From: Thalia democratica
Lineage: Eukaryota
Length of the DNA stretch: 64,000 nucleotides
NCBI GenBank assembly: GCA_965202585.1
Contig: OZ241831.1
Span: 14,880,001-14,944,000 of the forward strand
Reading direction: 5' to 3'
Shown here: positions 1-57,100 of the stretch, in pieces
Position numbering within the stretch: position 1 is the stretch's first letter
How the letters are laid out: each line of letters begins with the position of its first letter
Position numbers and translations under genes: made by a program
Notes under the pieces: model-generated
Database searches by the model: none
Told to the model about the DNA's origin: nothing
What the model saw: only the letters and a program-made list of their open reading frames with translations

Positions 1-2226
1 GATAAGCTTTCATCAATTATTTCAGCTATTTTTGTTTTGGTAAATCGCGTACTTGTTTATAGTGTTGTTTTTCTTTGAACAATCGATGTTGTTTACATTT
101 ATGTATTTTAATGTATGATTTTTAAATTACTATGCATGTTTATAATCGTGTTTTAGTTGTAATTAAACTATATTTTTAGTGAAACAAATATTGTTTGTTG
201 TTAACAATTGAAAACATACTTTGTTGATAAACCAAAGTAAGTTTTATTCTTATTACTACTTAAGTGTACTATTTTCATTGAAAAATATAACTAGTTTTTT
301 AAGTGACGTAGCGTAACTTTTTTTAATAAGTTAAAAAACAAATAATTGTTGAATGTTTAAGAAAAGTCCACAAAGTAAGAACGATTAAGATAGAGTTCTT
401 AGAAAAAAAACATATCAAGAAGAAAAAGACATCCAAGTTAGTTAATTATGTTAAGCATTCAATTACAGTAGGCAATAAATTAAGGATTATAGCAGTGATC
501 ACACTAGTTTACATCGCAAAAGTTAGATCAAAAATAATGTAAAAGTAGAGAAATCACAGCAAGCTTAACTGTTCAATTAATAATGGAAAGCGATAAAATA
601 TAGTTTGGAAGTAAACAGTGTTGTTCAGAGTTCTTTGATCCTTTATCATCACAAAGTAGATTTAGTATGTAAATTTGTGTCATTGAGTTTAGTACACATT
701 AGAAGCTTGCATCAATGACTGGTGATCCACGTAAGCTTTAGACTCATGGAAAATACAAAGAAAAAACAAATGATTTTTGGAGTTGTCTCATATACAGTAT
801 AAAAAAGAGATCAAGTTGTTCATTTTTTCTTTTGTATCATGTTTTTATGTGTCGACGTTTTTGTTTGATAGAGCCACAAACAATTTGAGTTCAACGAAAC
901 AAGTTTAAATATTTGTAAATATTTCAACTGTACTCTTAAACTATTGTTGTACTGAAACTGTATGTTTGTTTTGAACAGTCGCTGTTGTATACATTAATGC
1001 ATTGTACAACTTTCAATCTGCTTTTTATGGTTTCAGTTGCATTCTAACTAACAAGACTAGTATACTTTGAAAAATTAAACCTCAGTTTAATTCTTATCTT
1101 TGACTAAAGTGTTTTTGATATCAATACAAATTCAAGTTTTCTTCTCATTATAATCAACTGAAATTTGAATTTGAAAATTTAACAAATTTTTTCAGTGACA
1201 TGGTATTATTTTAGATATTTCATTTATAAAACTTATTTTGATATTAAAAATAACATTGTCTGTTTGAAAAACTTGTCCACAAAGTAAGCATGAATAAGAA
1301 TAAATTTTGTTTAATATACCTATTGAAAAACATTTTTACCTAACATTCAAATACTATTAAGAAAGGAAAACAGATAAATATTATCATTTAGAAGTAAAAT
1401 GTTTAGATACATAAGTAACTGGTTAAATCAGTTGGTGGTCCTTATTATTTTAGATTTATAACCAACATAACTTAGAACAAGCAATTAGAGTTACTTTAGG
1501 TCATCAAGTTGTCTAACACCTAGTCTAAACAAGTAACTTTACCATGAAAATAATAAAACAAGCATTTTTTAACCGTGTTTAAGCTAATGAATTGGTTTGT
1601 ATCATAGGGTGATGTTTTGGCTTGAAATGATATCTTAAATAAGCTAAATAGATGTCAGCCTTGTAGGTGGGAATACTTAAATGTGTTTGAAATTCACATT
1701 TGTTATCTTTTGTTCTGAACTTTTATTTCTATTTATATACTTATAACTTTTTAAAACATTTTACATGGTTTCAACTGCATTTAAGTTGATAAAAAGAAGA
1801 CGTTTAAAAGTTAAACCTTTGTTGTGTTGCTGATAATCAACAACAACTTAAAAATGTAACAAAAACTAAGGTTTTTTTTTGTTATAAGTTGAGTATACGT
1901 TACTGTATTATCTTTTTTTAAACACTTATTTACTGAATGTTTTAACAGAAATTCAACAAATGAACAAGAAGTTGTATAGAAAAAAAAAGTTCACGGACAA
2001 CGTATTGAAGTTAGTTAAATCCTTTTTTACAGATACTACTGTTTTTTCAAATTAGACTTATGCAATGGTAACCATAAGATTAAAACTTAAAAGTACGACA
2101 AATTTTAAATCAAACAACTAAAGTGTTTGATCTTTTAATTCTTATAACAACCAGTTTGTTTGTACAATTATCAATTTGTGGCTTGTACTTTAAGTAGATA
2201 TCAATAGCCGGTTTTGTTCAAATGGT

Positions 2227-2242
2227 GGTCCTAAAAAGGACC
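2227..2242 (-). terminator. Histone mRNA 3' stem-loop (H2B; repeated in every unit)
   Basis: Minus strand GGTCCTTTTTAGGACC followed by ACCA. Confidence 0.95.
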
Positions 2243-2255
2243 GGTTGTTGAGCAT

Positions 2256-2615
2256 TTATTTTGAGCTGGTGTACTTGGTAACAGCTTTAGTTCCCTCTGA
2301 AACTGCGTGCTTTGACAACTCGCCGGGGAGCAAGAGCCTGACAGCAGTTTGAATTTCGCGGCTGCTCACAGTTGACCTCTTGTTGTAATGAGCCAAACGT
2401 GAAGCCTCTGCTGCAATGCGCTCGAAGATGTCGTTGACAAATGAGTTCATGATTCCCATCGCCTTGCTGGAAATTCCGGTGTCGGGGTGCACTTGCTTCA
2501 AAACTTTGTACACGTAGATGCCGAAGCTTTCTTTGTGCCTCCTCCTTCGCTTCTTCTTGCCGTCGACCGGGGTGGTCTTGGCTACTGACTTCTTTGCGCC
2601 TTTGGTTGCGGTCAT
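2256..2615 (-). CDS. H2B: Histone H2B (unit 1)
   Basis: [17 protein letters not shown]...AVTKYTSSK histone fold; intronless; stem-loop 13 nt after the stop. Confidence 0.99.
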
Positions 2616-2663
2616 GATGATGTGTGAACTTCAGTCTCGGCGCCAGCTTATATACTGAAAGTT

Positions 2664-2675
2664 TATGCAAATTAG
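2664..2675 (+). promoter_or_regulatory. Extended octamer motif TATGCAAATTAG in the H2B promoter
   Basis: Contains ATGCAAAT; 49-60 nt upstream of the ATG, beyond a TATA-like element. Confidence 0.75.
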
Positions 2676-2744
2676 CATTTCCGTACGCGAACGACAGCCT
2701 CTCTCATTTTATGATTCTCTCGTTTGTCGTAAATATTTTTAGGT

Positions 2745-2760
2745 GGTCCTGAAAAGGACC
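2745..2760 (-). terminator. Histone mRNA 3' stem-loop (H2A)
   Basis: GGTCCTTTTCAGGACC followed by ACCT. Confidence 0.95.
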
Positions 2761-2774
2761 TGGTTTGTTTCAAC

Positions 2775-3155
2775 TTAGGCTGATTTTTTTGAAGCGGTCT
2801 TCTTGGGCAATAATACTGCCTGGATGTTTGGAAGAACACCTCCTTGAGCAATAGTGACGCCGCCGAGAAGTTTGTTCAACTCTTCGTCGTTGCGGATAGC
2901 TAGTTGCAAATGGCGGGGAATGATCCTGCTTTTCTTGTTGTCACGAGCAGCGTTACCGGCAAGCTCGAGCACTTCTGCGCTCAAATACTCGAGAACGGCA
3001 GCCAGATAAACTGGAGCACCAGCTCCGACTCTTTGGCTGTAGTTGCCAGTGCGCAACAGGCGGTGCACGCGACCGACTGGAAACTGCAGTCCTGCACGAG
3101 AAGACCTGCTCTTCGGCTTAGATTTGAGTTTTGATCCTTTACCACGTCCCGACAT
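2775..3155 (-). CDS. H2A: Histone H2A (unit 1)
   Basis: MSGRGK...[14 protein letters not shown]...VLLPKK. True ATG at 3155; the ORF track extends 12 aa upstream. Confidence 0.99.
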
Positions 3156-3233
3156 CTTGTTGTTCGAATGATTGTGCCAAGATGCTCGCACAGCTCTGTA
3201 TAAAACTCAAACCTAACCGCGTCGAACGAACAA

Positions 3234-3245
3234 CTAATTTGCATA
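3234..3245 (-). promoter_or_regulatory. Extended octamer motif in the H2A promoter
   Basis: CTAATTTGCATA on +; the same 12-mer as at H2B, inverted. Confidence 0.75.
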
Positions 3246-3318
3246 TGTCGTAGCTGCTCTTTAATCTTGTCAAAATGTTTGTTCAGCAGTGTTGAAGAAA
3301 TTTGATTTTGAAATGGGT

Positions 3319-3334
3319 GGTCCTAAAAAGGACC
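3319..3334 (-). terminator. Histone mRNA 3' stem-loop (H4)
   Basis: GGTCCTTTTTAGGACC followed by ACCCA. Confidence 0.95.
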
Positions 3335-3349
3335 GAGTTTGCTAGATGT

Positions 3350-3694
<345 letters not shown>

Positions 3695-3735
3695 TTATTT
3701 ATAAGCTGTTACGGACGCGTACGGTTACTACTAAA

Positions 3736-3747
3736 CTAATTTGCATA
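3736..3747 (-). promoter_or_regulatory. Extended octamer motif in the H4 promoter
   Basis: CTAATTTGCATA on +; TATAAATA-like box near 3695-3704. Confidence 0.75.
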
Positions 3748-3819
3748 CTCAGAAAAGTCTCTAACTTACATTCTTTCGTTTGGTTTATTTTCTCTCACTA
3801 TCAAACAAAGTTTAAAAGT

Positions 3820-3835
3820 GGCCCTGAAAAGGACC
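3820..3835 (-). terminator. Histone mRNA 3' stem-loop (H3)
   Basis: GGTCCTTTTCAGGGCC (one U-G pair) followed by AC. Confidence 0.95.
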
Positions 3836-3850
3836 GGTTTTAGCTAATGC

Positions 3851-4387
<537 letters not shown>

Positions 4388-4415
4388 TCATTTTTTGTTA
4401 ATATTTTGATTGAGT

Positions 4416-4431
4416 GGTCCTGAAAAGGACC
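4416..4431 (-). terminator. Histone mRNA 3' stem-loop (H1)
   Basis: GGTCCTTTTCAGGACC followed by ACTCA. Confidence 0.95.
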
Positions 4432-4448
4432 TTGGGTAAAAGAACAAC

Positions 4449-5033
4449 TTATTTCTTGCAGCTCTTCTTGGTACTTGCCTTCTTAGATGCTTTTTTGGCT
4501 ACCGGCTTCTTCTTGGTTACTTTCTTCTTCTTGCTTGCAGCTTTTTTAGATGCTGCTTTCTTAGGAGCACACTTTTTAGCAGGTCGCTTTTTGGCTGCTG
4601 GTTTTTTCGCTGCCTTCTTGGGAGCACACTTCTTTACTCGTTTCTTTGCTGCGGCCTTCTTTACTGCTGGCTTTTTAGCTACTTTTTTTGTCCTCTTCTT
4701 GGGACCAGCAGCTGGCATTGGAGCAAGCTTGAACGAGCCGGAAGCGCCTTTTCCAGTAGTCTGGAGAAAAGAACCTTTGGTCACGCCGCTGGTAAGTGCT
4801 CTCTTCAAGTGAGAATTAGAAGCTGAAAGGTCAAGCTTGTAGGTGTCCGCGATATATTTTTGTATCTTCTGGCGGGATGTACCTTTTCGTTCCTTCATTG
4901 CTCCCAGGGCAGAGCTAATCATCTCCCTGTAAGTCGGGTGTTCTGCCTTCTTGGCGCTTGGTCTCTTGGAAGACCTGGCCTTGGCTGCGGCCGCCGCTGC
5001 TACTGCTGGTGCTGCTACTGCTGTGGTAGACAT
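4449..5033 (-). CDS. H1: Linker histone H1 (unit 1)
   Basis: Globular domain HPTYREMI...GKGASGSFKL, Lys/Ala-rich tail, 3' stem-loop. Confidence 0.96.
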   Translation of the reverse strand: MSTTAVAAPAVAAAAAAKARSSKRPSAKKAEHPTYREMISSALGAMKERKGTSRQKIQKYIADTYKLDLSASNSHLKRALTSGVTKGSFLQTTGKGASGSFKLAPMPAAGPKKRTKKVAKKPAVKKAAAKKRVKKCAPKKAAKKPAAKKRPAKKCAPKKAASKKAASKKKKVTKKKPVAKKASKKASTKKSCKK

Positions 5034-5499
5034 TTTGTATGTATTTTAAAGCAACCGAAACAATACTTTTAGTAGTTACTGACTGTGACGAATTGACTGT
5101 TGAGCAGTTTTACTTTGTGAAGTACCTTTTACTGATTGTTACGAGCATTAGCATGTGAGTTTAAAGCGCATATGCTCATAAAAGCATAGTTATTTTTTTA
5201 CGAACGTCAAAAACATTCCAGTGACAAAGAAACCAGACTTAGCCTGGTCGGAAACAGAGTTTTTTTTAAAGCTTAGCTTTAAAGGTCCAGAAAAACAGTC
5301 TAAAAGTTACAGCACACCTCTGCATTTAATGATATAAACCTCAAATGAAACAAAATATACTACTACACATCCGGTTTAGTTTTCTTCAGCTGCAAACTTA
5401 AAACTGTAAGATTTTAGACAAGCACAAGTGTTTTTTTCCACTTCAAGCTTAAGTTAAGTTTTATTATTTTAATTTCATTCGGTTTTGTCAATTGTAAAA

Positions 5500-8400
5500 C
5501 CCATGAAGTATGTTTAACTTGATTACAACTTTAATTGTGCTGGTTAGTAAAAAGTAATTCATAAACAAACACAAGTATTTAATTTATGACACTTTACAAG
5601 TTATCATTACTTTAAGTATACTTATATTGAAAATGGCAGTACTAAACCACCTAAAAAAACTTAAGTACATAAGTTTTGAATTTGTTCTTCCACATACTAG
5701 TAACTTATCTTTTCAAAAATGTTCTGAACAGTAGCCATACAAAACTTGTTAAAAAGCTAGAAACTAATGTTTAACAAAGTTTGTTATATAAAACAGTCCC
5801 AACTAGTTACTAGTATTTCACAGTTAGAAAAATTTGAAACAACTTTTTAAAACTGTTACACAGTTGTTTAGATTTTTTAACAACGTTTTATTTGTTATAC
5901 TCAAAGCTGAACTAACAACTTTTTCTTTGTAGATTTCATGAAAAGAAAGCGAACAAATGGATTTGATCGTAACTTTCCAAAACAAGACGAAATAACTTAC
6001 ACTTAAATGAATATCAGTACTGTTCACTTATGTTCAAAGAAAAGGACCGAAATTTCAATATGAAGTTTAAAAGAGTTGCTTATTTTGAGACGAAAAACTT
6101 TACTTAGAAAAAGAGGTTAGGCTAATTTTAAAAGTAGTATCAAGTAAGTAACGATCATAAAAAAAAATATCAGTGTTTCATAACTAATTTGAAAAACTAG
6201 ATTGGATAAACTTTTTTTTACATTCAGTACTCATAAACTTGCGATGTGTTTAAGAAAGTCTATTTGACAATCATTTGTTGGATTAGTTCTTCATACTTAT
6301 TATGAAAGTTTCTAGTTTATCTTAAACATTTTCAATAATAAATGACACACTAACTAGACTGTCATTTAGTTGTAGACTTATTTTGTCTGTTGCTTTCATT
6401 TTGCTATTTATATAAAAGCCATAACTTTATTTTTTATAAGCGTTTCGTTCTGCTCTAGACTTTTAACAAATATTACTTGAAATAAACAGTTGCAGTAGTT
6501 TTTAGTTATCAAGTTGTCTCATACACAGTCTTCAATAAAGTTACAAAGCTGTTTACTTCTTTTCCTTTGCATAATGTTTCAGCTATTGGTTTTTTTACGC
6601 GTTGATGTTTTATGTTAAAAATCCATAAGCAACTAAGTTTAATAAAACAAGTCTAAGATTTGTAAAAAAATTCAACTTTGCTATTCATGACAGTTGTACT
6701 GAAATTGAATGCTTTTTGGTCGTTTTTTTTCTTTAGAACAATCACTGTTGTTTACATTTATTTATGTTTGAAAATACATTTTGATAAGCATGATCAGTAT
6801 AATTTTCATGAATAAACCTCTACTGTTCAAGTATTTTTAAAAATAAAACGAAATTTATTAAAACTAACTGTTTTATTTTCATTCCATAATGAAATTACTT
6901 TTTATAGTGACGTAGAACAAGTTTTAAAAATTAAGTTTAGTATTTATTAAATTAAAAAAAAGTCTACGAAGTAAGCATGGTTGAGAATTTTTTTTTGTCT
7001 AAATAAAGAAGTTAACAAGAAAAAGCCTTTGGACAACACGTTTAAGTTAGTTGAAGCTTTTTATGAAACATCAAATTACAACTAGTTTACAAAACTTATT
7101 CCACGATTTAGGCAATACTTTCAAAACATAAAACTAGCTCTCTTATCAAAAGTTGCTTAGAATGTCCAGTAAAAGTACAAAGGCAATAGTAAGTATGCAT
7201 AACTAGGTGACAAAAGAAAAGACAGAAAAAATATTATTTAGAAGTAAAATGTGTCATTCAACTAGCTCTAACTCTTACTTTTGATCCTTTACCACCACAA
7301 AGTTGGTTGAGTTGCACATTTTTGTTGTTTGTTTAACACTGCTTAGTAGACTTTAAAGCTGGTTAAATAAACTGGTTGTCCTGATTACATTAGATTAACT
7401 TGATAAAGCTATAAGTAATGCTAGATCAACTAAAAGATGTAAGCTTTTTAAAGTTTTAATAGATTCGAAATGTTCTTTTTCGTTCATGTTGTGATGCATA
7501 TATGTTGTTTTTTGTTTATGTATTTATGAGTTGTAATGCATGTTTTAAATGTGTTTTAGTTAAAGTTATTTTCTGAAACGATACAACATAAATTAGACCC
7601 AAAGCTAAACTAATTTTCAACTTGATAAATCTGTGAACAATTTGAGTTCAATAAAAAGCTTTTTAAAAAGAATTCGGTTGTAATACATGATGGTTGTTGT
7701 ACTGAAATTGCAGTTTTGTTGATTTTTTTATTTTGGTTTGAACAGCTTCTGTTGTTAACTGTATTTTAAACTGTTTTATTTAGTTTGAGTTGCATTGTAA
7801 TAAAAAGAAATAATACATTTTAGAAACTACTGGTTTATTAGATTGTAATTGTTAATATCCAAAGTTAATTTTGTTTTGTTATAATTTAATGTATTATTTT
7901 CATATAAAATCTAATACTTTTTACAGTGACGTAGAACAGTATTTTTTAAATAAACTAAATACTTTTTTAATTTTACAAAAAGAAGTATACAAAATAAGCA
8001 TAACGGGAATAAGTTTTGTTTAAAGAAAGAAGTTTACAAGAAAATCTTATGGACACAAAAATCAAGTTAGTTGAAGCTTTCTGCGAAACGTATATTTATT
8101 TGTAATGTAACAGACTTAAGCAATGGTTTTTAAATGCAACTAGCTCCCTCCTCAAAAGTAGTTTAAAATGTCATGTAAGAGAACAAAAACAATTGTAAAT
8201 ACAAGTATGTGACAAAAAGTTAAAACACAAAAGTATAAGTTAGAAGTAAACTGTTTCATACAAACATTCTAACTCACCTTTTACCAGCACAAAAAACAAT
8301 AAGTTTGGTTCGTTTTTGTCGTCTAGTTAGAGCTTGTTTAATGCTGCTTAGTGGACATTGATATCTGGTTGAATCAGTTGGTGGTCCTTATCACTTTAGA

Positions 8401-10843
8401 CTTATAACAGAAATAACTATAGACTGTAAAAGTCGTTTTAAGTCATCAAGTTGTCTCACATATAGTTGTAACAAGTAATACAAATGAGTGGTGACAAGCT
8501 GTTACTTCTTTTCCTTTCAGCTTATAAATTGAGTTCTTTCATGTATTCGACTAGTTAAGCAATTAAAAACAAACTAAATAGATGTCAGCTTTGTAAAATA
8601 AAAGTTTTAATGATAAGCTTTCATCAATTATTTCAGCTATTTTTGTTTTGGTAAATCGCGTACTTGTTTATAGTGTTGTTTTTCTTTGAACAATCGATGT
8701 TGTTTACATTTATGTATTTTAATGTATGATTTTTAAATTACTATGCATGTTTTTAATCGTGTTTTAGTTGTAATTAAACTATATTTTTAGTGAAACAAAT
8801 ATTGTTTGTTGTTAACAATTGAAAACATACTTTGTTGATAAACCAAAGTAAGTTTTATTCTTATTACTACTTAAGTGTACTATTTTCATTGAAAAATATA
8901 ACTAGTTTTTAAAGTGACGTAGCGTAACTTTTTTTAATAAGTTAAAAAACAAATAGTTGTTGAATGTTTAAGAAAAGTCCACAAAGTAAGAACGATTAAG
9001 ATAGAGTTCCTAGAAAAAAAAACATATCAAGAAGAAAAAGACATCCAAGTTAGTTAATTATGTTAAGCATTCAATTACAGTAGGCAATAAATTAAGGATT
9101 ATAGCAGTGATCACACTAGTTTACATCGCAAAAGTTAGATCAAAAATAATGTAAAAGTAGAGAAATCACAGCAAGCTTAACTGTTCAATTAATAATGGAA
9201 AGCGATAAAATATAGTTTGGAAGTAAACAGTGTTGTTCAGAGTTCTTTGATCCTTTATCATCACAAAGTAGATTTAGTATGTAAATTTGTGTCATTGAGT
9301 TTAGTACACATTAGAAGCTTGCATCAATGACTGGTGATCCACGTAAGCTTTAGACTCATGGAAAATACAAAGAAAAAACAAATGATTTTTGGAGTTGTCT
9401 CATATACAGTATAAAAAAGAGATCAAGTTGTTCATTTTTTCTTTTGTATCATGTTTTTATGTGTCGACGTTTTTGTTTGATAGAGCCACAAACAATTTGA
9501 GTTCAACGAAACAAGTTTAAATATTTGTAAATATTTCAACTGTACTCTTAAACTATTGTTGTACTGAAACTGTATGTTTGTTTTGAACAGTCGCTGTTGT
9601 ATACATTAATGCATTGTACAACTTTCAATCTGCTTTTTATGGTTTCAGTTGCATTCTAACTAACAAGACTAGTATACTTTGAAAAATTAAACCTCAGTTT
9701 AATTCTTATCTTTGACTAAAATGTTTTTGATATCAATACAAATTCAAGTTTTCTTCTCATTATAATCAACTGAAATTTGAATTTGAAAATTTAACTAATT
9801 TTTTCAGTGACATGGTATTATTTTAGATATTTCATTTATAAAACTTATTTTGATATTAAAAATAACATTGTCTGTTTGAAAAACTTGTCCACAAAGTAAG
9901 CATGAATAAGAATAAATTTTGTTTAATATACCTATTGAAAAACATTTTTACCTAACATTCAAATACTATTAAGAAAGGAAAACAGATAAATATTATCATT
10001 TAGAAGTAAAATGTTTAGATACATTAGTAACTGGTTAAATCAGTTGGTGGTCCTGATTATTTTAGATTTATAACCAACATAACTTAGAACAAACAATTAA
10101 AGTTACTTTAGGTCATCAAGTCGTCTAACACCTAGTCTAAACAAGTAACTTTACCATGAAAATAATAAAACAAGCATTTTTTAACCGTGTTTAAGCTAAA
10201 GCTGGTTTGTATCATAGGGTGATGTTTTGGCTTGAAATGATATCTTAAATAAGCTAAATAGATGTCAGCCTTGTAGGTGGGAATACTTAAATGTGTTTGA
10301 AATTCACATTTGTTATCTTTTGTTCTGAACTTTTATTTCTATTTATATACTTATAACTTTTTAAAACATTTTACATGGTTTCAACTGCATTTAAGTTGAT
10401 AAAAAGAAGACGTTTAAAAGTTAAACCTTTGTTGTGTTGCTGATAATCAACAACAACAACTTAAAAATGTAACAAAAACTAAGGTTTTTTTTGTTATAAG
10501 TTGAGTATACGTTACTGTATTATCTTTTTCTAAACACTTATTTACTGAATTTTAACAGAAATTCAACAAATGAACAAGAAGTTGTATAGAAAAAAAAAAG
10601 TTCACGGACAACGTATTGAAGTTAGTTAAATCCTTTTTTACAGATACTACTGTTTTTTCAAATTAGACTTATGCAATGGTAACCATAAGATTAAAACTTA
10701 AAAGTACGACAAATTTTAAATCAAACAACTAAAGTGTTTGATCTTTTAATTCTTATAACAACCAGTTTGTTTGTACAATTATCAATTTGTGGCTTGTACT
10801 TTAAGTAGATATCAATAGCCGGTTTTGTTCAAATGGTGGTCCT
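5500..10843. repeat. Intergenic spacer made of ~6 degenerate ~0.8-1.0 kb subrepeats (same in each unit)
   Basis: Recurring landmarks: GTGACGTAG at 6907, 7926 and 303; GTTGTACTGAAATTG at 6693 and 7696; AAGTTAGTTGAAGCTTT at 7044 and 8064; AACAATTTGAGTTCAA at 7636 and 879; TGGTGGTCCT at 8379 and 1433. The left boundary is approximate. Confidence 0.8.
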
Positions 10844-10866
10844 AAAAAGGACCGGTTGTTGAGCAT

Positions 10867-11226
10867 TTATTTTGAGCTGGTGTACTTGGTAACAGCTTTA
10901 GTTCCCTCTGAAACTGCGTGCTTTGACAACTCGCCGGGGAGCAAGAGCCTGACAGCAGTTTGAATTTCGCGGCTGCTCACAGTTGACCTCGTGTTGTAAT
11001 GAGCCAAACGTGAAGCCTCTGCTGCAATGCGCTCGAAGATGTCGTTGACAAATGAGTTCATGATTCCCATCGCCTTGCTGGAAATTCCGGTGTCGGGGTG
11101 CACTTGCTTCAAAACTTTGTACACGTAGATGCCAAAGCTTTCTTTGTGCCTCCTCCTTCGCTTCTTCTTGCCGTCGACCGGGGTGGTCTTGGCTACTGAC
11201 TTCTTCGCGCCTTTGGTTGCGGTCAT
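10867..11226 (-). CDS. H2B: Histone H2B (unit 2; K85T in human numbering)
   Basis: HYNTRST instead of HYNKRST (T>G at 10991). Confidence 0.97.
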
Positions 11227-11960: not shown

Positions 11961-12305
<345 letters not shown>

Positions 12306-12461: not shown

Positions 12462-12969
<508 letters not shown>

Positions 12970-30835: not shown

Positions 30836-32931
30836 TTTGTATGTATTTTAAAGCAACCGAAACAATACTTTCAGTAGTTACTGACTGTGACGAATTGACT
30901 GTTGAGCAGTTTTACTTTGTGAAGTACCTTTTACTGATTAATACGAGCATTAGCATGTGAGTTTAAAGCGCATATGCTCATAAAAGCATAGTTTTATTTT
31001 TACGTTTATGCAAATTAACTATTTCTTTTAGAATATTAATTCGTTACGGACGTATTTTAATGAAAACAGGTTTCACTTTACCATTGACCGTTTGATGGCG
31101 CAAGATTTTTTTTCCATAGTCAATTTGTTGCAAATTTCGTTTTTAAAGATGAAATTTTTGCCCGTTGCCCACTTGCGGCGCTGTTGAGTCAAACCATCCG
31201 TCCCCACCTACCACCCTAATAGTTTATAGGTTTATATAGTTTCTAGTTTTACTTTCAAAATGTTAAAGTTTGTGCTACGTCACTACTGTGAAAAATTTTT
31301 GCAATGAAGTTTAACATCTAAATTTAGTTAGCTTCATATAAAGCAAAAATTTCATAGTTGCTTATCAAAAAACAACTACAAAGAATTTTTAGTAAAGTTT
31401 TAAAAGTTTTTAATCACAATACAGGGCTACTATCAAATGTTGTGCACTTTTTCTTTACATTACAAAATAACCAGTTTTATGTCCAGTTTTCATATTAATA
31501 AAGTTTAATATGAATAAATCAATAAAATTTAAATACTTTAATGTCATTTATTAACCTGACTTAAATAAGTAATGGGTCTTTTAAAGTTTGTTTTAAATAT
31601 TTTGTACAAATGTACAATAATCTATTTCTTTAGAAGATTAAGAGACATTTAAAACCTAATAAGTTTATATAAAAACTTACAGACTAATCATTCAACCAAA
31701 ACTTTCAAAACATTTAATAACTTTTATATTTAAGGTTTTTGAAAATATTAATTATCAATGGATCGTTTATTAATATCTTTTATATACGGTTTATATACCT
31801 TTATAAAGAAACTACAACTGATAGTTCTAACAATAGAAGGGAGTGAAGTAAAAATTAAAACCATCACATATACACTACATCTGTCTTAGAGTAAATAATA
31901 TAAACAAAACTGTCATTAAATTTAGATTAAGTATAATTAAACGAATTTTTAAAATACACTTTTAGTATGTTTAATAATACAAGTAAATAAAGATGTCTTA
32001 TGAAGTCTTATGAATATTGTATTCAATAACAATCTAACAACCCTAATTACTTTTTTTTTTTTCATTAAGTAAAATTAGAAAAATTTAACTTGTATTTTAA
32101 TGTACAATAAAATTTACCGTATTATAAGAAAATACAATGATCAGTCTTATCTATGATAACATATGTTCTTTTAATATCTAACACATATTGTTACAAAACA
32201 TAATCAATAAATATATAAACGAATTGATTAATTGCACCACTTATATTTTGATAGAATATCTTGGTCAAAAATAAAACATAAATACATTAGCATAACTTTT
32301 ACTATGAATTAATTATTTATTGAGAATGTATTAACACATCATAAAGCAAAAGATTAAACTAAAAGTATTTTTGAAAATTCTATGTTTTTGAATAATTATC
32401 TGTTTTTTTTGTGTATTTTTAAGGTTGTAGGAAGAGTTTACTGCTGATTTATAAAAAGAATACATCTTAAACATATTTGAGTACAAATTTCTAAAGAGTA
32501 TAGATGTATTTTTACTTTTATAATTTTTACACATGCTGAGTATTTTTAATTACATTTAAAACCAAATAATGCAAAACCAGATGTAATTTTTTTTTTGAAA
32601 ATTTCAAATTTTTTTTTGCTGTAAGCTGGTTTTTACATTTTCATAATAACAGTGCAAAGTCTTCTTAGTTTAAACATGAACTGATTTTATTTTAGCAGTA
32701 CAAAATAAACAATAAATGACTATAAAATATTGTTTATTATTATAAAGTGGTTTTTTTTAATGAAGTTAAAGTTTTTATAAGTAGATGGTAACTTTTGTAA
32801 ATGTTGTTAGATCTTATACTTAAGACTTAATTTAAGTTGGTTTTTGTAAATTTGTTCAAATATAAATTATGCATTTATTATTTACATATAACAAAAAATT
32901 ACAAATGAATGATAAGTTTGTTTTATATAAT

Positions 32932-45100: not shown

Positions 45101-48100
45101 GTTCATAGCTTGGGGTATCATTATTGGTGGTTTAACAAACAAATATGTTTGTCCTTTAAAAATATCGAATATTTTAAGATTTCGAAATTAAAAAAAAGAG
45201 GAAAGCCTTAAAATTATACAAGTACCTTTAATACGCTTTGCAAAAAGTTTGTTTTAAATAACTTATGTGTTTACTCTTATTTCTTTTGGCAACGAATACT
45301 TAAACAACTTTTATCTCTTTGAAAAATTTAATTTCAGAAGCTTTAAAATTTAGGATTTTTGCATTAAAAACACATTTAAAAATCAAAATGTATAAAACTT
45401 TTATATTGTAAATTAATTTTCACCTTTTCAATTTTTTCGTAAGCTTCTGCAAGTAACAGTTCTCTATTATGTATTGCATTGCTTGCCGGTTGGTAATAAC
45501 CTTGATTCCATTTCTGTGTTTTAATTATAATTAAAATAAATAATTACAATATTCTAACTATTATTGTTTAACTTAAACATCTATTTAATTGCATTAAATA
45601 CAAATACTCGTTTTTGAAAAGAATTTTTAAACGAGTATTTGTATTCTATATTTCTGTTTATAACAGCTTATATAAGTGTTCTAAAAGCAGTCGGTATAAA
45701 TTATTTTTTCATATTTAACTTCATCTTTATACAGTTATGAAACATTTTTGAAATCAAACAACTGTTTTATAAAATCAGTAACCTTTAATAGGAAATTCTT
45801 AAGTATTCTATTAAAAATAATGTAAAATAAATCGTCACTTAAGTTTTTTATAGTTTTAAATTTTAAACTGCTATAAAAACACTTATCTTTCAAACAGTGT
45901 AAAAACTAACTTCAAATTCGTAATCGGTTAGTTTTCTTTGTGCAAAACATAAAGTTCTGAGCCCTTCTACGGCATACTCTTTTAATTGGACGATTGTTGT
46001 TTCTATTTGAATAAAAAAGTAAGCGTTTACAATAAATAAACTACCAAAGTATTATTTTTCAACTAATAAAAAGCTAATAAAGCGAATGTCGCGGATTCGA
46101 TCCCCGTACTGGCCACATATCTTCCCCGTTAATATGGTGCTGAGTATTCTCGGGCGACCGAGGTTCGATTTCCCGACAGGGGTATCAACTTAATTATTTG
46201 TAGAATATATAGATATAAAAATATTTAATGTTTATCCGTTACAGTTTGAAAAATGATAAATAAAATAATATTAGACGTTATGATTATTTTCCTACAAATT
46301 ATAAAATTACTATTGTTAATCTGTAAAAAAAAATTAAAGCTGTCATATAACCCTGGTTTAATCGAATGAGTTTTAAATTTAAAGTAAACTTTAGAAAATA
46401 ATAGCTTAAGTATTTGTTAAAGACAACTGTTAAAATATAGTTCCACTGCACAAAAATTTTATTAAATCTTCACACTTAATTTTTTTTAATTTACTCATTT
46501 GTTAAGTACAAACAAACTTATTCGCATTTAAAAATATGTAACTTACTATTTTTCTACGTCAAAAAGTTATAAAAATCTAGAGAGTATCATAATTTAAACT
46601 TGAGTTTATTAATTCATTTCAATCATTCAAAAATATTTTTGGTACTATGGAATTTGATAAAATATTTATTATGCCAATAAACATTAGTTCATCAGTTTTA
46701 GGCGTTAACTTATTTGAAACCTTAACTAATATATATATATATACTTTTAAACATAAAAAAACACTTCTTTTTGATAACTTTATTTATTTGTTTTTGTTTC
46801 TATGCACGAATAAGTTTTAATTATTTTATTAATATTTGACAAGATCAGAATTTTTTCCCACTGAAACCTGGTAATAAATAGAATAACTAATTCGCACTAA
46901 TACTACTATTATTTAAATAAAATATACACATAAACTTCGACTTCAAATAATGATGCTTCTTTTATCATCATTTAGTTTTGAGCATCAAAGATGTTTGTGT
47001 TTAACTTGATTAACTTATACACATAAATAATACAAAATAATTGAACACAATTAAATGTTTTTAGTTTATTCAATTTAATACGTTTACATTTTATTACTGT
47101 CATATAACATTCAAGCAGTATGTTTAGAGCTCATCCTACAGCATTATTACGTCATATTACGCTAATGTTTTTATATAAGCAAAATAAATGTAATCTAGAC
47201 GTGTGGCCGGTTAGCTCAGTCGGTTAGAGCGTCGTGCTAATAATTTGAATGTCGCGGACTCGATCTTCGTACTGTCCACATAGCTTAGAAGTGAGTATTC
47301 CCGCCTGTTACGCGGAAACCGGAGTTCGATTCCCCGACGGGGGTATTTTCAATTTAATTATTTGTAAAATATTAAGAAATAAAAATATTTGGTGGTTATT
47401 CTTTACAATTTAAAATATGATAAATGAAATAATATTAGACTTTATGTATAAATTCGAAGTCTTTCTACAAATTACTATTGTTAATCTTTAAAAAAATTAA
47501 AACTGTCATATCTGCAATCTTTTAAATTGTGCATCGTATATATTGAACTTTTTTATACTCTAACTACTATTTTTAAATTTAGTTTTTATTATAATTATTT
47601 GATGTATTTAGGGCACGGGATGTAAATCACGTTCTTCAAAGTTACTCTTATTTTTTACATAAATAACCAGGCTATCAGTAGGTTTTACCATTAAAAAAAA
47701 GTTACTTTTGAGATACAAGCTATGAATTTTTTGTAGATTTTTATGAATTGTTTCATAAGATATTGCAAGAACTAAATATCATCACAAAACACAGTCCAGA
47801 TTTCAATATAAAATTAGTTCTTAAAGCTTTTTTTAAAAACTTCAAACAACCTTTATAATTTGAATCGGGCGCCAGTCTCGGCATTATGACATCGTCTGCC
47901 CCTTTCGTCATCAGGTAGATCTGGTTTTCAGGACTCCTGACAATCACCGACATTCTCTTCCTGTTCGAGTTGAACTCGAGAACTGCCAGTATCTTGTACT
48001 GACGGTCCTGGCCTAGCTGTTGGATACAAAATTGTGTTTTTTACAAGTATATTAAAGTTTAAATAACTTTTAGTTGTTGAGACATGTCTAAACAGTTTAA

Positions 48101-51100
48101 AAAAAAACTATGAACTTCTTGTCTAACTAACAAAAAACACAAAAACAACATAAATATTAATTATTAATAACTTTTACAGTCGGTCTTTCTTTACTTGTTG
48201 TAAATAAATATCACTTTTTACGGAAAACATTTTACTTTTAGAGCAATAAGATTGTTTTAAAATTTAGTTTTGTTAAAATATATGTAAAATATTTTTTATA
48301 CTTTTCTAAGCAAAAGTATATTGGTCATAGCTAATTATATTTATTAACTTAAAAAAGATTTTGTTTATCTTCAAAACTTGTAACCACAAAGACATTTAAT
48401 CAAAACTGTAAAAAGAATAAACCACAACAGTAATTTTTTGAAACAAAATACATTTGTACTAAGGGGAATATATGACTTTAAAAAGATCAAATTACTAAAA
48501 TTTAGAATTCTTTTAATTAAAGAAAGTAATATATCTTTAAAAAAGTAAAAAAAAACTTTAATAATACATAAAAACAACTGTTGACTGACAAGTCTTCTTT
48601 ATATTAATATATATATATATATATCAGCATTAAAATTTATTTAATTATGTGTTAGATATATTCACTTAAAACACACGCTTGTAAGTATACAACAATAAAA
48701 AACTAGATTTAAACGTAAAAATTTAGGTTTATTTAAGAACAACATAGCAATTTTATGATAAAAACTTGTCAAAATTGTTATCAATGTAAATGCTGAAACT
48801 AAGATATTATACTACAAATATAAATATGTTTTGTTTGAAAAAACTTAAAAAAACATATCAGCAACAAAAAACTAAAATTTCTAAGTGTGCACGACTTTTA
48901 AGTAGAAATTTTACTATATACTAAAAATAAACTTGATGGTCTATAGGAATAATTAATTCTTAGACATATATAAGCACAAATATTATGAAAACATTTAAAA
49001 AATAAGCTACACAAAACTTATAATACTTTAAACATTTCTATTAATAATAAACTCATGTAGACTGTTACAAACTTTCAATGTCATTAACTAATTAAACAAG
49101 AAAAAATAAACTATTAAATTTTGTAGATATTAATTAAACTATTGTTAGAAATGACAACTACCTCATAAATTAGATCAAGTATAAATAAATATATTTTAAT
49201 TGTACAAAAAAAAACTTATTAAAATGATTTCAGAAAAATAACTCGACCTACTTATTAAAGAAATAAAACAAATTGTTTATTTTAGACAAAAAACTAACTA
49301 AACTAGTGTTAGAAATAAAAGTTACCTATTCTATTAATTAAATTAAATAACAAAAATATGTATTTCTATAAAAAAAACTAATAGAAACAAAAGTAACCTA
49401 ACTAACTAAAGAAAAAAAAATATTTCTAACAAAATATCTAGTTGAAATACTTTTAGAGACAAAAATTACCTCATCAACTAATATAGTATCCGGAGTTCTC
49501 ACGCAAAAGACAAAGCCGAGATTTTTAGCTGATTTTATCAGAGCGTTTTCGTCAGGACTGGCTGCTTGGTATCTGAATGTTAATAATAAGCTATCAAACA
49601 ACTCAAATAAATATTATTTTATACTTTGCTATTTTATTATGATAGTTAAAACTGTTGCTTTAACGAAGTTTCTCAATATAAACTGAAAAAAAAAATTAGA
49701 AAAAGATGTATAACAAAACATATGCTTAATTCAATTTTAATAACAAAGTTTACAGATTTTAAAAGCCGCAGAGATCACGGTTTTAGATTTAGAAAGTTTA
49801 ATAATTTCGTAGAAATAAAGCAAATTTTGTTATAACGTTTGATAACTTTTTGTTAATAAATTATTCATAACTTAAAAATAAACTCCAACAAATATTCTTA
49901 TTCTTCTATACGAATATTTTAAACAAAAAATGCTCCCCGTCGGGGAATCGAACCCCGGTCGCCCGCGTGACAGGCGGGAATACTCACCACTATACTAACG
50001 AGGAAGATATGTGGCCAGTACGGGGATCGAACCCGCGACATTCGCGTTATTAGCACGACGCTCTAACCAACTGAGCTAACCGGCCACACGCCTAGATTGC
50101 ATTTGTTCTGGTTATATAAACATAATAGCGAATTATGACGTAATAAAGCTGTAGGATTAACTTTGTGCAAGCTGTTTGACTGGATTAAACTACAACTTGT
50201 TCACGTTTTCATCTGTAGTTATTGATGTAATTTATAATTATCCTCTAATACTTTACTGATTTTTTATTTTATCGAAATACATCAAATGTTTTACTTCTTT
50301 TTTATTATAAATACTTTCTTGTATACTTTCAACAAGTTTTAATCATTTTATACCAGCATTAACCCATCTCGTAAGAAAACAAAACTGAAATTTTGAACAA
50401 ATGTAAAAGTAAAATGCGTTTAATTTAAAAAAAAATTATAGAATGATGTTTTTTACTAATATAAGTGTAATCTATAATACGATGTTCAATTAAACTAATT
50501 AAATACAGACTAAATAGTTAACATAATTTGTTTCATTTTAAATATTTTACTAAAGAGTTATAAATTTAAAGAAAACAGTTAGTATTATAACCATAAATAT
50601 ATGTATAAAACCGTTTATTATACTAAATAAAACTTAATTTTTTATAACAACACCATATTTTGCATTAGCTGAATATACAGAACAGTAGTCTTCAATTTTT
50701 TTTTAGTTTATGCATAGCAAATAGAAATTAACTATGTGAACACAAGATAGTTAAGTAAACACTTTTTTCTTGAAGTAATACTACTGTTATATTGCTGTAT
50801 GTTTTTTACTACAATTATATTACAAGTGTTTCTAAGTTTTAAAAACAACAACTTATAAGTACAAAACAAAAAATTTAATATTTTTAAAATAGTTTTACAA
50901 CTAATCAAAATTTATGTGCACAGTATTTTCATTTATGTACACATTTTGAGATACACTGAGAGAAAACAACATAAACATATCAATAACTTTATTTCAGGGA
51001 AATATCTGTGTTTACATACAATCTGAAATTTCTAAAATACTAGTACAAAAATACTGAATATTTCTTAAATAATAAAGCTAAAGAATTAAACAAATTAGCA

Positions 51101-54100: not shown

Positions 54101-57100
54101 TTCTTTTTTCTCTAGCGATATAAAGTCAATAGTCTCGATTAATTTACGGTTCAGTTTTTTTAGTTTCTACTGCATTAGAGCGGTCTGAACTCAGTGCAGC
54201 TTTTTGCTGCACTTAATTTTTAATGGTTTCAATCTTGTTGAAGTGATTTCGATTTTAGAATGTTTTTTGAGTTTGGTTTAAACATTTAGTGTTTAGTTTC
54301 TGTTATTCGAGTATTGTCGTCTTTTAAAAGAATTGATAATTTGATTTATTAGTGTAATGTTGTGCAGTATTTTATCATCTTTTCATTTCGCAGCTTCATT
54401 GTAAATAAAATCATTATCACAAATTCGAACTCAGTTTAAATTAGTATAAGTAACTGATTGATTAAACCTTTAGTAAATAGTAAGTAATTCATATTAGTTT
54501 AGTTAAAACAACTATAGTTTAAGCGTTATCTTGGGGGGCATCTACTATACAAGTTAGAGCGCACGTTGCGTTATAAATCAGGCCAATAATAGTTGTATAA
54601 GTAGAACCTCTAGGGATGGCGACATGATGACCCGGACGTCCAGTTATTTATAGCTGGAATTGAACACAGATACCTTCATTAAATTTTCTACGTTTTTTAG
54701 ATGGTGACATGGGGACAGAGTGGAATAAACCTAATTTAATAATAGTATAAATTCGATAAACTTTATGGCATTTATTTAACCTAGTCATCAGGTCTGTAAA
54801 ATTTATAAAAATGAGTTTAAAATTTCTAGTTGGAAAAACAACTAAGTAGTTCGAGTTTGTGATAGATTTGAGTTGTTTTTTTCTAATGGTAATTAGTTTT
54901 ATTGTGTTTAATTTTATGTTAAAGTGGTTTGGGGAAAGGCTAATCGACATGTGTTAGAACTAAAATGTATTTGTTGTGTAGATATTATTGCAATTCATTG
55001 TTGAAGCGTTTTTCAAAATGAGTTTTAAACTTGTACGAGCAAGTTTAACAAAAGTTAGTCTTGTTTTCAAGTTGTTCCGCGTTTTGTCAAATTAATTAAA
55101 TATCGTTCAATCGTTTTAAACATTTTATTAAAAATTAAAATGAAATAAAAGGCTTCTAATAATAAAACTTTCTTATAACAAAAAGAGTTTTAAACGTCTA
55201 TAAAAGTTAGCAACTGTAAAGTTTAATTGTTTTGTTTTCAAACAATCGGTTTAATTTGAACTATAACGGGTAATAAACTTTTTAAACTGCATGTAAAAAA
55301 CATTGTTGTTTTTTCGTTCGTCCTTGTAAAAATATTTGTATGAGGTTATTAAAACTTGTTTTCGAGTGCATAATCGGTTATTAAAGTGAAATTTCTTAAA
55401 TTTATGAAGCTTAATTGAGTTTTATATTTAGCAACAATGTTATGTTCAAACTTTAAACTATAATATTTAAAGTTTTTTTTTTACAATGACCTTGTTAATT
55501 GCTTTTAACAAACTTTATTGGCATGTTTTTTGTTGTTTTAAAGCTAGCCGTACTTACAAAAAATAATTTTTAACAAGGTCATTCGAGCTATTTAATGTCT
55601 TACCCGGTATTTAAAATCTGAAAATAAAAAACAATTTTGTTTAAAATTTTTAGAATATTAAAATTTTCAAAATCAGTACAAGTTCACTGGCTATATTTTT
55701 ACGAAAATAAGTTTAAACTTTTGAGACGCATGTGAATGCTTGTTTTGTCAACTAATTCGTGTAAAATGTGAAATGTTTTTTATTTTAAAGCTTGTAGAGA
55801 ATTACTGTATATTGATTGGAGCCAAAAATGTTTCTCATTTACTTTGAAACTTAACAAACTTTAAAGTTAAAATAAAAATAGACTAATGGATTAATGCAAT
55901 GTTGTTGCTAACTAGTAGCATATAAGTTTGTAAATTGAATTTTTTTATCTTTTAATGTTTTAACTTGTTTTTAAAATTGATATCAAGTAGTGACGTACAT
56001 TCTAATTGCACTTTCGCACGAACGGCTCGAGAAACGAATCGGCGAGGAGCGGTAGAGGGGACTTATGTACGAGGTGAGGAACGAGGAGCTGAAAGAGGAG
56101 ATGTATGGAGAGACGGATCAGAGGATTCCGTAGCACCAAGAGACCGCTGGGTGAGGCAAGGAGACGGATTCCGTGGCGCCAAGAGACCGCTGGTTGAGGC
56201 AAGGAGACGGATTCCGTGGCGCCAAGAGACCGCTGGGTGAGGCAAGGAGACGGTTCCGTAGCGCCAAGAGACCGCTGGTTGAGGCAAGGAGACGGATTCC
56301 GTGGCGCCAAGAGACCGCTGGTTGAGGCAAGGAGACGGTTTCGTAGCGCCAAGAGACCGCGGGGTGAGGCAAGGAGACGGATTACGTGGCGCCAAGAGAC
56401 CGTTGGGTGAGGCGAGGAGACGGATCGGCGTGGACCGGTCAGACGACGTGGAGATGTGCAGGGGCGGAGCGAGTTCCGGCGGCGAGGAGATTTTTTGAAC
56501 TTTCTACATTTTTCTGTTATTTTGAAAAACTGTACCATACTTTTATCATTTTTGTGTATTTTAAACCGGTTTATAGAATTTATAGAATTAAGTAAAGTAA
56601 TACTTTTTAAACTAAAGAGGTAAAAGTCGGCGGTCGTTTTTTCGTTCATTTTTCTATATAGGGAGTTTTAAGCATTCTTACAAGTGTTAGAGAATAAAAA
56701 TTAATGTATTTTTTCGGAAAACCAAGAATAAATTTTTAAAGTACGAAGGTAAGAGGAGAAAATGTACCGCGTGAGCGGTAATTGTCTCTTTTTTACTTTC
56801 TTCTTTTTTCTCTAGCGATATAAAGTCAATAGTCTCGATTAATTTACGGTTCAGTTTTTTTAGTTTCTACTGCATTAGAGTGGTCTGAACTCAGTGCAGC
56901 TTTTTGCTGCACTTAAGTTTTAATGGTTTCAATCTTGTTGAAGTGATTTCGATTTTAGAATGTTTTTTGAGTTTGGTTTAAACATTTAGTGTTTAGTTTC
57001 TGTTATTCGAGTATTGTCGTCTTTTAAAAGAATTGATAATTTGATTTATTAGTGTAATGTTGTGCAGTATTTTATCATCTTTTCGTTTCGCAGCTTCATT

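What the first reader, a model, noticed from the sequence alone, without database searches (positions are those of the whole stretch)
5500..10853. The histone-array spacer is a tandem amplification of the H2B 3' flank, and several subunits keep half of the histone stem-loop
Seen: the 5.6 kb spacer is ~6 old, degenerate ~0.8-1.0 kb subunits. The last subunit runs without a break into the H2B stem-loop. TAAGTAGATATCAATAGCCGGTTTTGTTCAAATGGTGGTCCT (ends 2232) aligns 29/42 with TTAGTGGACATTGATATCTGGTTGAATCAGTTGGTGGTCCT (ends 8388). Similar ends occur at 1442, 7382 and ~728. A TTTGATCYTTTA landmark lies 95-107 nt from the half-stem at 2126, 7280 and 634. On the transcribed strand the best-kept subunits therefore carry AGGACCACCA, the 3' arm of the stem plus the ACCA cleavage context. 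A CRE-like GTGACGTAG is kept in 3 subunits. Inference: the array's last gene may be followed by serial copies of its own termination region, acting as fail-safe terminators, insulators or enhancer repeats, by analogy with rDNA spacer repeats. Alternatively these are AT-decayed relics of H2B-containing units.
Basis: partly seen in the sequence, partly recalled or inferred. Interest (0 to 1): 0.75.

Follow-up and report, generated by a model that had tools for sequence, protein, structure and literature searches.

The report
Old repeats in a histone spacer
The long AT-rich spacer of this tandem histone gene array is an old five-fold head-to-tail copy of the DNA just downstream of the H2B gene; the leftover half of the histone stem-loop at each joint looks like a scar of the duplication, not a working signal, although one short motif inside the repeats is kept unusually well.

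Summary
Observation confirmed, with one correction: five subunits, not six. Window 1-31004 holds about 3.6 tandem 8.6-kb histone units, all genes on the minus strand in the order H1-H3-H4-H2A-H2B. Spacer 6446-10843 is five direct subunits of 0.7-1.0 kb, 50-64% alike. The last one is the H2B 3' flank and runs into the H2B stem-loop. Region 5034-6445 shows no detectable homology.

Each subunit ends in the 3' arm of the stem-loop plus ACCA: two copies are exact and two are decayed.

The functional reading is not supported for the half stems.
- No spacer copy is a complete stem-loop.
- In diverged array variants from marine metagenomes, the same joints carry different single substitutions.
- The half-stem window is not kept better than chance among the subunits.
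- Subunits are lost or fused in some variants.
- No H2B coding relic is detectable.
- No RNA data exist for this stretch.

New here: a 12-nt motif, TTTAACTAACTT on the histone strand, lies about 215 nt downstream of the H2B cleavage site. It is invariant in eight array lineages and is the best-kept 12-mer among four subunits. It is a candidate cis-element.

The scan had found this spacer structure before on other pieces of this genome. One earlier follow-up called it neutral relics, and I largely agree.

The parts
6446..7382 (-). Subunit S2, the one farthest from H2B. On the plus strand it ends in the decayed half stem GGTTGTCCT. Its far edge abuts non-repeat spacer.
   Evidence: Left-out profile test: E 4e-71. 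Alignment A1.
7383..8388 (-). Subunit S3. It ends in an exact half stem plus ACCA (plus-strand TGGTGGTCCT, 8379-8388).
8389..9340 (-). Subunit S4. It ends in the decayed half stem GGTGATCC.
9341..10054 (-). Subunit S5, shortened by two internal deletions that the variant L011 does not share. It ends in an exact half stem (10045-10054).
   Evidence: Left-out profile test: E 2e-29. Alignment with L011.
10055..10843 (-). Subunit S6, which is the H2B 3' flank itself. It is continuous with the real H2B stem-loop.
   Evidence: Left-out profile hit at 10060-10680, E 1.8e-12. Terminal 150 nt: p 0.003 without the 9-mer, below 0.0003 with it.
10813..10858 (-). Complete H2B 3' stem-loop: 6-bp stem, UUUU loop, then ACCA. 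The duplication breakpoint lies at the boundary between the loop and the 3' arm.
   Evidence: Rfam RF00032, 31.7 bits, E 4.6e-06. Joint sequences.
5034..6445 (.). Non-repeat part of the spacer, including the H1 promoter. It is not a sixth subunit.
   Evidence: No profile hit on either strand.
10542..10646 (-). Conserved non-coding element in the H2B flank. Its core is TTTAACTAACTT on the histone strand (plus 10619-10630).
   Evidence: A 12-nt run invariant in 8 lineages, permutation p<0.0002. 30 of 60 columns invariant against 10.6 expected. No conserved RNA fold.
7044..7055 (-). Copy of the conserved 12-mer in S2. Further copies lie at 8064-8075 (S3) and 9047-9058 (S4, one mismatch). S5 has none.
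   Evidence: Best-kept 12-mer among S2, S3, S4 and S6, p 0.002.
6907..6915 (+). CRE-like GTGACGTAG in S2. It also occurs at 7926-7934 (S3) and 8914-8922 (S4). It is decayed at the CpG in S5 (9807-9815) and deleted in S6.

Best explanation
A piece of about 0.95 kb was duplicated head to tail until five copies stood between H2B and the next unit's H1. The piece starts at the boundary between the loop and the 3' arm of the H2B stem-loop and runs downstream. This happened before the present array variants diverged.

The 3' arm plus ACCA at each joint is a scar of that breakpoint. Without the 5' arm it cannot form the hairpin that the histone processing machinery binds.

Since then the copies have mostly decayed toward AT, to 50-64% identity. 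The whole 8.6-kb unit is kept about 99% uniform by array-level homogenisation. Subunits are occasionally lost or fused by deletion or unequal exchange.

Shown: the homology, the joints, the decay and the copy-number differences. Inferred: that the half stems have no function.

A short motif downstream of H2B (TTTAACTAACTT) is under constraint and was multiplied along with the flank. What it does is unknown.
For: - Periodic self-similarity far above composition-matched controls.
- Leave-one-out profiles recover every subunit, including the H2B flank.
- The subunit ends match only the H2B flank, not the flanks of the other four histone genes.
- No complete stem-loop in the spacer at E up to 5.
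- Orthologous joints in variants L003, L011, L013 and L017 carry different single substitutions in the half stem.
- The half-stem window is not kept better than chance among subunits, p 0.07 and 0.45.
- G/C positions are kept less well than A/T positions, 0.47 against 0.67 across lineages, as expected for AT-biased decay.
- Variants with fewer or fused subunits exist, and full-depth joints 8024>9934 and 9083>10114 appear in genomic contigs of two organisms.
- The subunit profile has no hit in the 33 kb outside the array.
Against: - Two of the four spacer half stems are still exact 10-mers in this lineage. Their 24-nt contexts differ at only one position, which is more than uniform decay predicts. 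Local gene conversion would explain it, and so would selection.
- Several short motifs are kept significantly better than background among subunits, p 0.002-0.015, and one of them across eight lineages. The subunits are therefore not wholly free of constraint.
- There is no transcription, termination or chromatin data for this animal, so function is argued from sequence alone.
Confidence: 0.7

Rival explanations
1. The subunits are working modules. The amplification multiplied a cis-element of the H2B downstream region, and the copies act together as an enhancer, insulator or terminator for the array, as subrepeats of rDNA spacers do. The element would be the TTTAACTAACTT motif, perhaps with the CRE-like/TATA-like site.
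For: - The 12-mer is invariant in eight array lineages against a background of 18% invariant columns, p<0.0002.
- The same 12-mer is the best-kept window among S2, S3, S4 and S6, p 0.002.
- It is present in the S4 orthologues of L013 and L015.
- The CRE-like site is kept in three subunits here, and with one change or none in L013 and L015.
- Conservation among paralogs and conservation among lineages are correlated per site, r 0.30.
Against: - S5 lacks the 12-mer, and S5 and S6 lack an intact CRE-like site.
- After smoothing, the paralog-lineage correlation is only borderline, p 0.05, and part of it is a base-composition effect.
- Subunit number is not held constant among variants.
- Constraint is firmly shown only for the copy next to H2B.
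- No binding factor or activity is known.
Confidence: 0.2
2. The half stems plus ACCA are serial fail-safe terminators or processing sites for transcripts that read through the H2B 3' end.
For: - Exact AGGACCACCA at two spacer joints, always on the transcribed strand.
- H2B is the last gene of each unit, upstream of the next H1.
Against: - No 5' arm, so no hairpin. There is no Rfam Histone3 hit in the spacer at E up to 5.
- The half stems decay independently in related variants.
- They show no excess conservation among subunits.
- From established knowledge: SLBP needs the complete stem-loop.
Confidence: 0.05
3. The subunits are decayed copies of whole H2B-containing units or of some other gene ('fossil coding modules'), not of non-coding flank.
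For: - Subunit length of about 0.95 kb could hold a small gene plus its flank.
- A CRE-like site directly followed by a TATA-like run on the histone strand resembles a promoter.
Against: - tblastn with all five histones against the spacer and against the subunit consensus gives nothing better than E 0.03, at inconsistent places.
- The subunit profile does not hit the gene region.
- The longest stop-free stretch is 67 codons in the spacer and 70 in the consensus.
- At 50-64% identity between copies, a relic of the conserved H2B gene should still be detectable.
Confidence: 0.04
4. The subunit is a dispersed repeat or transposon remnant that landed next to H2B and then formed a satellite. Its likeness to the stem-loop would be chance.
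For: Spacers of rDNA arrays are reported to be filled with transposon remnants (bioRxiv 10.1101/2023.02.20.529178, seen).
Against: - No profile hit in the 33 kb of non-array sequence in this window.
- The repeat is collinear with the H2B flank right up to the real stem-loop.
- Most genomic contigs that match the spacer stay within array sequence.
Confidence: 0.02

Closest known systems
Internally repetitive intergenic spacers of rDNA arrays (subrepeats that duplicate promoters, enhancers or terminators)
   Same: - Head-to-tail subrepeats nested inside the spacer of a tandem gene array.
- Derived from the gene's own flank.
- Copy number differs between units.
- The whole unit is homogenised while the subrepeats stay diverged. 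Compare PMC3036644 on the Daphnia IGS (abstract seen).
   Different: - A Pol II histone array, not rDNA.
- The subunits are long (0.7-1.0 kb), few (five) and old (50-64% identity).
- No regulatory activity has been shown.
- The joint lies inside an RNA-processing hairpin.
Sea urchin alpha-histone repeat, with an enhancer and the sns5 insulator flanking the H2A gene (PMC2794192)
   Same: - A tandem unit with all five histone genes.
- A functional non-coding element sits in the 3' flank of one histone gene. This is the best precedent for the conserved motif downstream of H2B.
   Different: - The sea urchin element is single-copy per unit and experimentally defined.
- Here the element is known only from conservation and is multiplied.
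- No sequence likeness was tested or claimed.
Canonical histone pre-mRNA 3' processing signal (stem-loop, ACCA, downstream element)
   Same: The spacer joints carry the 3' arm and the ACCA context, identical to the H2B signal.
   Different: - The 5' arm and the loop are missing, so the defining hairpin is absent.
- Read-through and coupled termination at real histone genes depend on processing at the complete signal (PMC4896052, abstract seen).

Membership tests
Histone 3' UTR stem-loop (Rfam RF00032) | 6-bp stem with a 4-nt loop that matches the covariance model | tested here: not met
   All five genes of the unit match, at 22-33 bits. No spacer position matches at E up to 5.
Histone 3' UTR stem-loop (Rfam RF00032) | ACCA cleavage context directly after the 3' arm | tested here: met
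   AGGACCACCA is exact at the S3 and S5 ends and decayed at the S2 and S4 ends.
Histone 3' UTR stem-loop (Rfam RF00032) | Downstream element complementary to the 5' end of U7 snRNA | not testable with these tools
   The U7 snRNA of this animal is not known, and there is no U7 hit in the window.
Internally repetitive spacer of a tandem gene array (rDNA-IGS type) | Direct head-to-tail subrepeats inside the spacer, above chance | tested here: met
   356-bit self-match against a random maximum of 39.7 bits. Leave-one-out profiles give E 1e-12 to 1e-71.
Internally repetitive spacer of a tandem gene array (rDNA-IGS type) | Subrepeats homologous to the gene's own flank | tested here: met
   The H2B flank is the fifth subunit. 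Other histone flanks do not match.
Internally repetitive spacer of a tandem gene array (rDNA-IGS type) | Subrepeat number varies between units | tested here: met
   Variants L013/L014/L016/L018 and L015 lack or fuse subunits. Joints 8024>9934 and 9083>10114 appear at full depth in two genomic runs. Several other joints have short sides and are not counted.
Internally repetitive spacer of a tandem gene array (rDNA-IGS type) | Subrepeats have enhancer, promoter or terminator activity | not testable with these tools
   No RNA run holds the stretch.
Histone pseudogene / relic gene unit | Detectable similarity to a histone coding sequence | tested here: not met
   Best tblastn E is 0.03 in the spacer and 0.24 in the consensus. 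The profile does not hit the genes.
Dispersed repeat / transposon remnant | Copies outside the histone array | tested here: inconclusive
   None in 31005-64000. The rest of the genome could not be searched.

The most novel reading that the evidence does not exclude
The amplification multiplied a real cis-regulatory element of the H2B downstream region, with TTTAACTAACTT as its core and possibly the CRE-like site as a partner. The histone array would then carry a bank of repeated binding sites that sets insulation, termination or locus-body assembly between units. That would make it a Pol II counterpart of rDNA spacer subrepeats.
Probability: 0.2. Interest if true: 0.55.

Novelty: new variant of a known kind. 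Interest (0 to 1): 0.3.

Why it matters
The finding gives a dated, well-defined example of how the spacer of a tandem gene array grows. A single breakpoint inside a small hairpin was copied four more times, and the result was then frozen into an array that is homogenised only at the level of the whole unit.

It removes an attractive but unsupported idea, half stem-loops acting as serial terminators. It points instead to one short, strongly conserved motif downstream of H2B, which is the sensible place to look for a regulatory element in this array.

The subunit joints and their lineage-specific decay are also usable markers for tracing how the different histone arrays of this genome are related.

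Tried and rejected
- Tandem Repeats Finder sees nothing at this period, because the copies are too diverged and the period limit is 500.
- Rfam at gathering and at E up to 5 finds no small-RNA gene and no extra stem-loop in the spacer.
- tRNA scan: none in the array.
- Sixth subunit at 5500-6445: rejected.
- Histone relics or fossil ORFs: rejected.
- The first metagenome pattern scan, with the spacer half stem plus its flank, found nothing. The second, with the H2B stem-loop, gave one useful contig.
- A look-up of the H1 protein gave one short contig with no upstream DNA.
- Using 4-fold sites of H2A/H2B as a neutral yardstick failed. They differ less (5-12%) than the flank (15-39%), probably through codon bias or conversion of the genes.
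- Consensus RNA folding of the conserved element on both strands gave no structure and no covariation.
- Splice-site-like readings of the conserved element are possible on both strands, but the GT is not kept in all lineages. I do not rely on them.
- The metatranscriptome run matched only the H2B coding end, at 80-90% likeness and from other organisms, so it says nothing about read-through.
- The organism names are coded, and I did not try to decode them.
Full report
**Setting.** The window begins inside a tandem histone array that ends at 31004, about 170 nt upstream of the last H1 start codon.
- Each 8.6-kb unit carries H1, H3, H4, H2A and H2B, in that order and all on the minus strand.
- Each gene is followed by a match to the Rfam histone stem-loop model.
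- The genes sit 150-190 nt apart. After H2B comes a 5.8-kb spacer at about 26% G+C, which runs to the next H1.
- The units in the window are 99-99.7% identical.

**Is the periodicity real?** Yes.
- A relaxed self-comparison of the spacer aligns 6619-9001 with 7627-9911 over 2.5 kb at 60.8% identity (356 bits).
- Further matches lie at two, three and four periods (135, 105 and 50 bits).
- Twenty random sequences with the same dinucleotide make-up gave a best self-match of 35 +/- 2 bits, with a maximum of 39.7.
- Tandem Repeats Finder misses this, because the period is beyond its limit and the copies are too diverged.
- I set the subunit borders at the half-stem ends: S2 6446-7382, S3 7383-8388, S4 8389-9340, S5 9341-10054, S6 10055-10843.
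- Pairwise identity is 50-64%, against 30% expected from composition. S6 is the most divergent.

**Is the H2B flank one of the subunits?** Yes.
- A profile built only from S2-S5 finds 10060-10680 at E 1.8e-12 (40 bits). The best hit in 107 kb of random sequence was 6.4 bits.
- The last 150 nt before the stem-loop were tested separately against a profile of the subunit ends. Without the shared 9-mer they rank ninth against 3000 random sequences (p about 0.003). With the 9-mer they beat all 3000.
- The 3' flanks of H2A, H4, H3 and H1 carry the same stem sequence but score nothing. The likeness is therefore specific to H2B and is not a by-product of the stem.
Once the 9-mer is removed it is 20/33, which is not significant alone (P 0.16). 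The case rests on the profile and on collinearity along about 790 nt.

**How many subunits?** Five.
- Region 5034-6445 is not hit by any profile on either strand.
- S2 ends within a few bases of the phase at which the other subunits end, and is followed by unique sequence.
- This is what a simple tandem multiplication of one segment predicts: H2B, 5' arm, loop, then five copies of the segment, then the old unique spacer.

**The joints.** On the histone strand every subunit starts with the 3' arm of the stem plus the cleavage context.
- It is exact (AGGACCACCA) at the S3 and S5 ends.
- There is one change at the S2 end and two at the S4 end.
- The 15 nt before each half stem are homologous to the far end of S2, not to the 5' arm or the loop.
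- The breakpoint therefore lies at the boundary between the loop and the 3' arm.
- All near-matches to this 9-mer in the 64-kb window are in the array and on the histone strand.

**Related sequences.**
- Exact look-ups of the H2B protein and of a two-residue variant, plus one pattern scan, fetched 21 contigs from marine metagenomes.
- Their genes are 92-99% identical to the window. Two flanks are near-identical to it, and the others fall into about seven lineages at 61-85% identity.
- Genomic contigs of two coded organisms also hold many spacer variants under 90% alike. At least some of these lineages are probably other arrays of the same genome; others may be related species. I cannot tell which.
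- They share recognisable S4, S5 and S6, so the amplification is older than their divergence.
- L011 keeps two stretches that S5 of the window has lost.
- L013, L014, L016 and L018 pass from S6 into S5/S4, and L015 passes from S6 into S4.
- Genomic contigs show joints 8024>9934 and 9083>10114 at about the same depth as the main form. Subunit number is therefore not fixed.

**Are the half stems kept by selection?** The evidence says no.
- At the S5/S6 joint, the window and L003 have the exact 10-mer, L011 has one change and L017 has two.
- At the S4/S5 joint, the window, L011 and L013 each have a different change.
- Among the subunits of the window, the half-stem window is not better kept than column shuffling predicts (p 0.07 with five subunits, 0.45 with four).
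- The two exact copies sit in 24-nt contexts that differ at one base, and the S3/S4 and S5/S6 joint regions align at 67%. This fits a local conversion or a later duplication step as well as it fits selection.
- No spacer copy can form the hairpin. From established knowledge, SLBP binds the complete stem-loop, and termination at histone genes is coupled to processing at that signal (PMC4896052 and PMC2781718, abstracts seen).

**Are the subunits relics of genes?** No sign of it.
- tblastn with all five histones, with composition correction off and 2-letter words, finds nothing better than E 0.03 in the spacer and 0.24 in a G/C-favouring consensus of the subunits.
- The nucleotide profile does not hit the gene region.
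- Open frames are short.
- The subunits are still 50-64% alike, so a copy of the strongly conserved H2B gene would be expected to show.

**What is conserved.** Most of the flank decays.
- Across lineages, G/C positions are kept at 0.47 and A/T positions at 0.67.
- CpG is depleted: 61 observed against 105 expected.
- One block stands out. On the histone strand, TTTAACTAACTT (plus 10619-10630, about 215 nt past the cleavage site) is invariant in all eight lineages. Only 18% of columns are invariant overall.
- The longest invariant run in 5000 column shuffles was 9. The surrounding 60 columns hold 30 invariant positions against 10.6 expected (both p<0.0003).
- A second block lies 20-60 nt further downstream, separated by a stretch of variable length.
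- The same 12-mer is the best-kept window among S2, S3, S4 and S6 (p 0.002). It is also present in the S4 orthologues of L013 and L015. S5 lacks it.
- Other windows kept above chance among S2-S5 include the left half of the CRE-like site (p 0.003) and TTTAGAAGTAAA on the plus strand (p 0.002).
- The CRE-like site is intact in S2, S3 and S4 and in L015. It has one change in L013. It has lost its CpG in S5 of the window, L011 and L017, and it is deleted in S6.
- The conserved element has no conserved RNA fold on either strand and no Rfam match. I read it as a candidate protein-binding site, but its function is unknown.

**What could not be tested.** No RNA run holds the stretch. The one metatranscriptome laid on it matched only the H2B coding end, at low likeness. 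There is therefore no evidence for or against read-through, termination or spacer transcripts.

**Verdict.**
- The structural observation is right, apart from the count of subunits.
- The spacer is an old five-fold tandem amplification of the H2B downstream flank, with its breakpoint at the stem-loop.
- The half stems are best read as junction scars.

The scan had noted the same structure several times on other pieces of this genome. One earlier follow-up called it neutral relics. My tests agree. They add the cross-lineage decay of the half stems, the subunit loss in variants and the conserved 12-mer.

Noticed in passing
window 12666-12720 (unit 2, H3 gene): The H3 copy of the second unit has a 29-nt deletion inside the coding sequence; unit 1 positions 4085-4113 are missing. 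The deletion shifts the frame, so this H3 copy is broken in an otherwise 99.7% identical unit.
   Followed up: partly
window 10867-11226 and 11961-12272: Unit 2 also carries single amino-acid changes in very conserved histones: H2B K79T (HYNTRST) and H4 G3R (MSRRGKGG).
   Followed up: no
window 30980-31040: The array ends at about 31004, some 170 nt upstream of the last H1 start codon and inside the H1 promoter region. Unrelated AT-rich sequence follows. That sequence begins with TATGCAAATTAAC, which resembles the extended octamer of the core-histone promoters.
   Followed up: partly
window 2664, 3234, 3736, 4348: The 12-nt extended octamer TATGCAAATTAG is present once in each core-histone promoter, inverted at H2B. 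It is absent from the spacer subunits and from the H1 promoter.
   Followed up: partly
window 49932-50085 and 47205-47278: Two adjacent tRNA genes (Asp-GTC and Ile-AAT) lie seven bases apart on the minus strand. A third, weaker tRNA match lies at 47.2 kb.
   Followed up: no
window 56001-57000: An isolated G+C-rich kilobase (0.447, against about 0.25 around it) with strong G over C skew (+0.29). It was not examined.
   Followed up: no
L019 (metagenome contig, coverage about 1250): Histone-array contigs of this lineage reach very high coverage in some marine metagenomes, and spacer contigs reach depths of 1200-5000 in two genomic runs. This indicates a very high copy number of the array.
   Followed up: no
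H2A/H2B genes against the flank in L003-L022: Four-fold degenerate sites of the histone genes differ by only 5-12% between array lineages, while the adjacent flank differs by 15-39%. The coding regions are therefore homogenised or constrained at silent sites separately from the spacer.
   Followed up: partly
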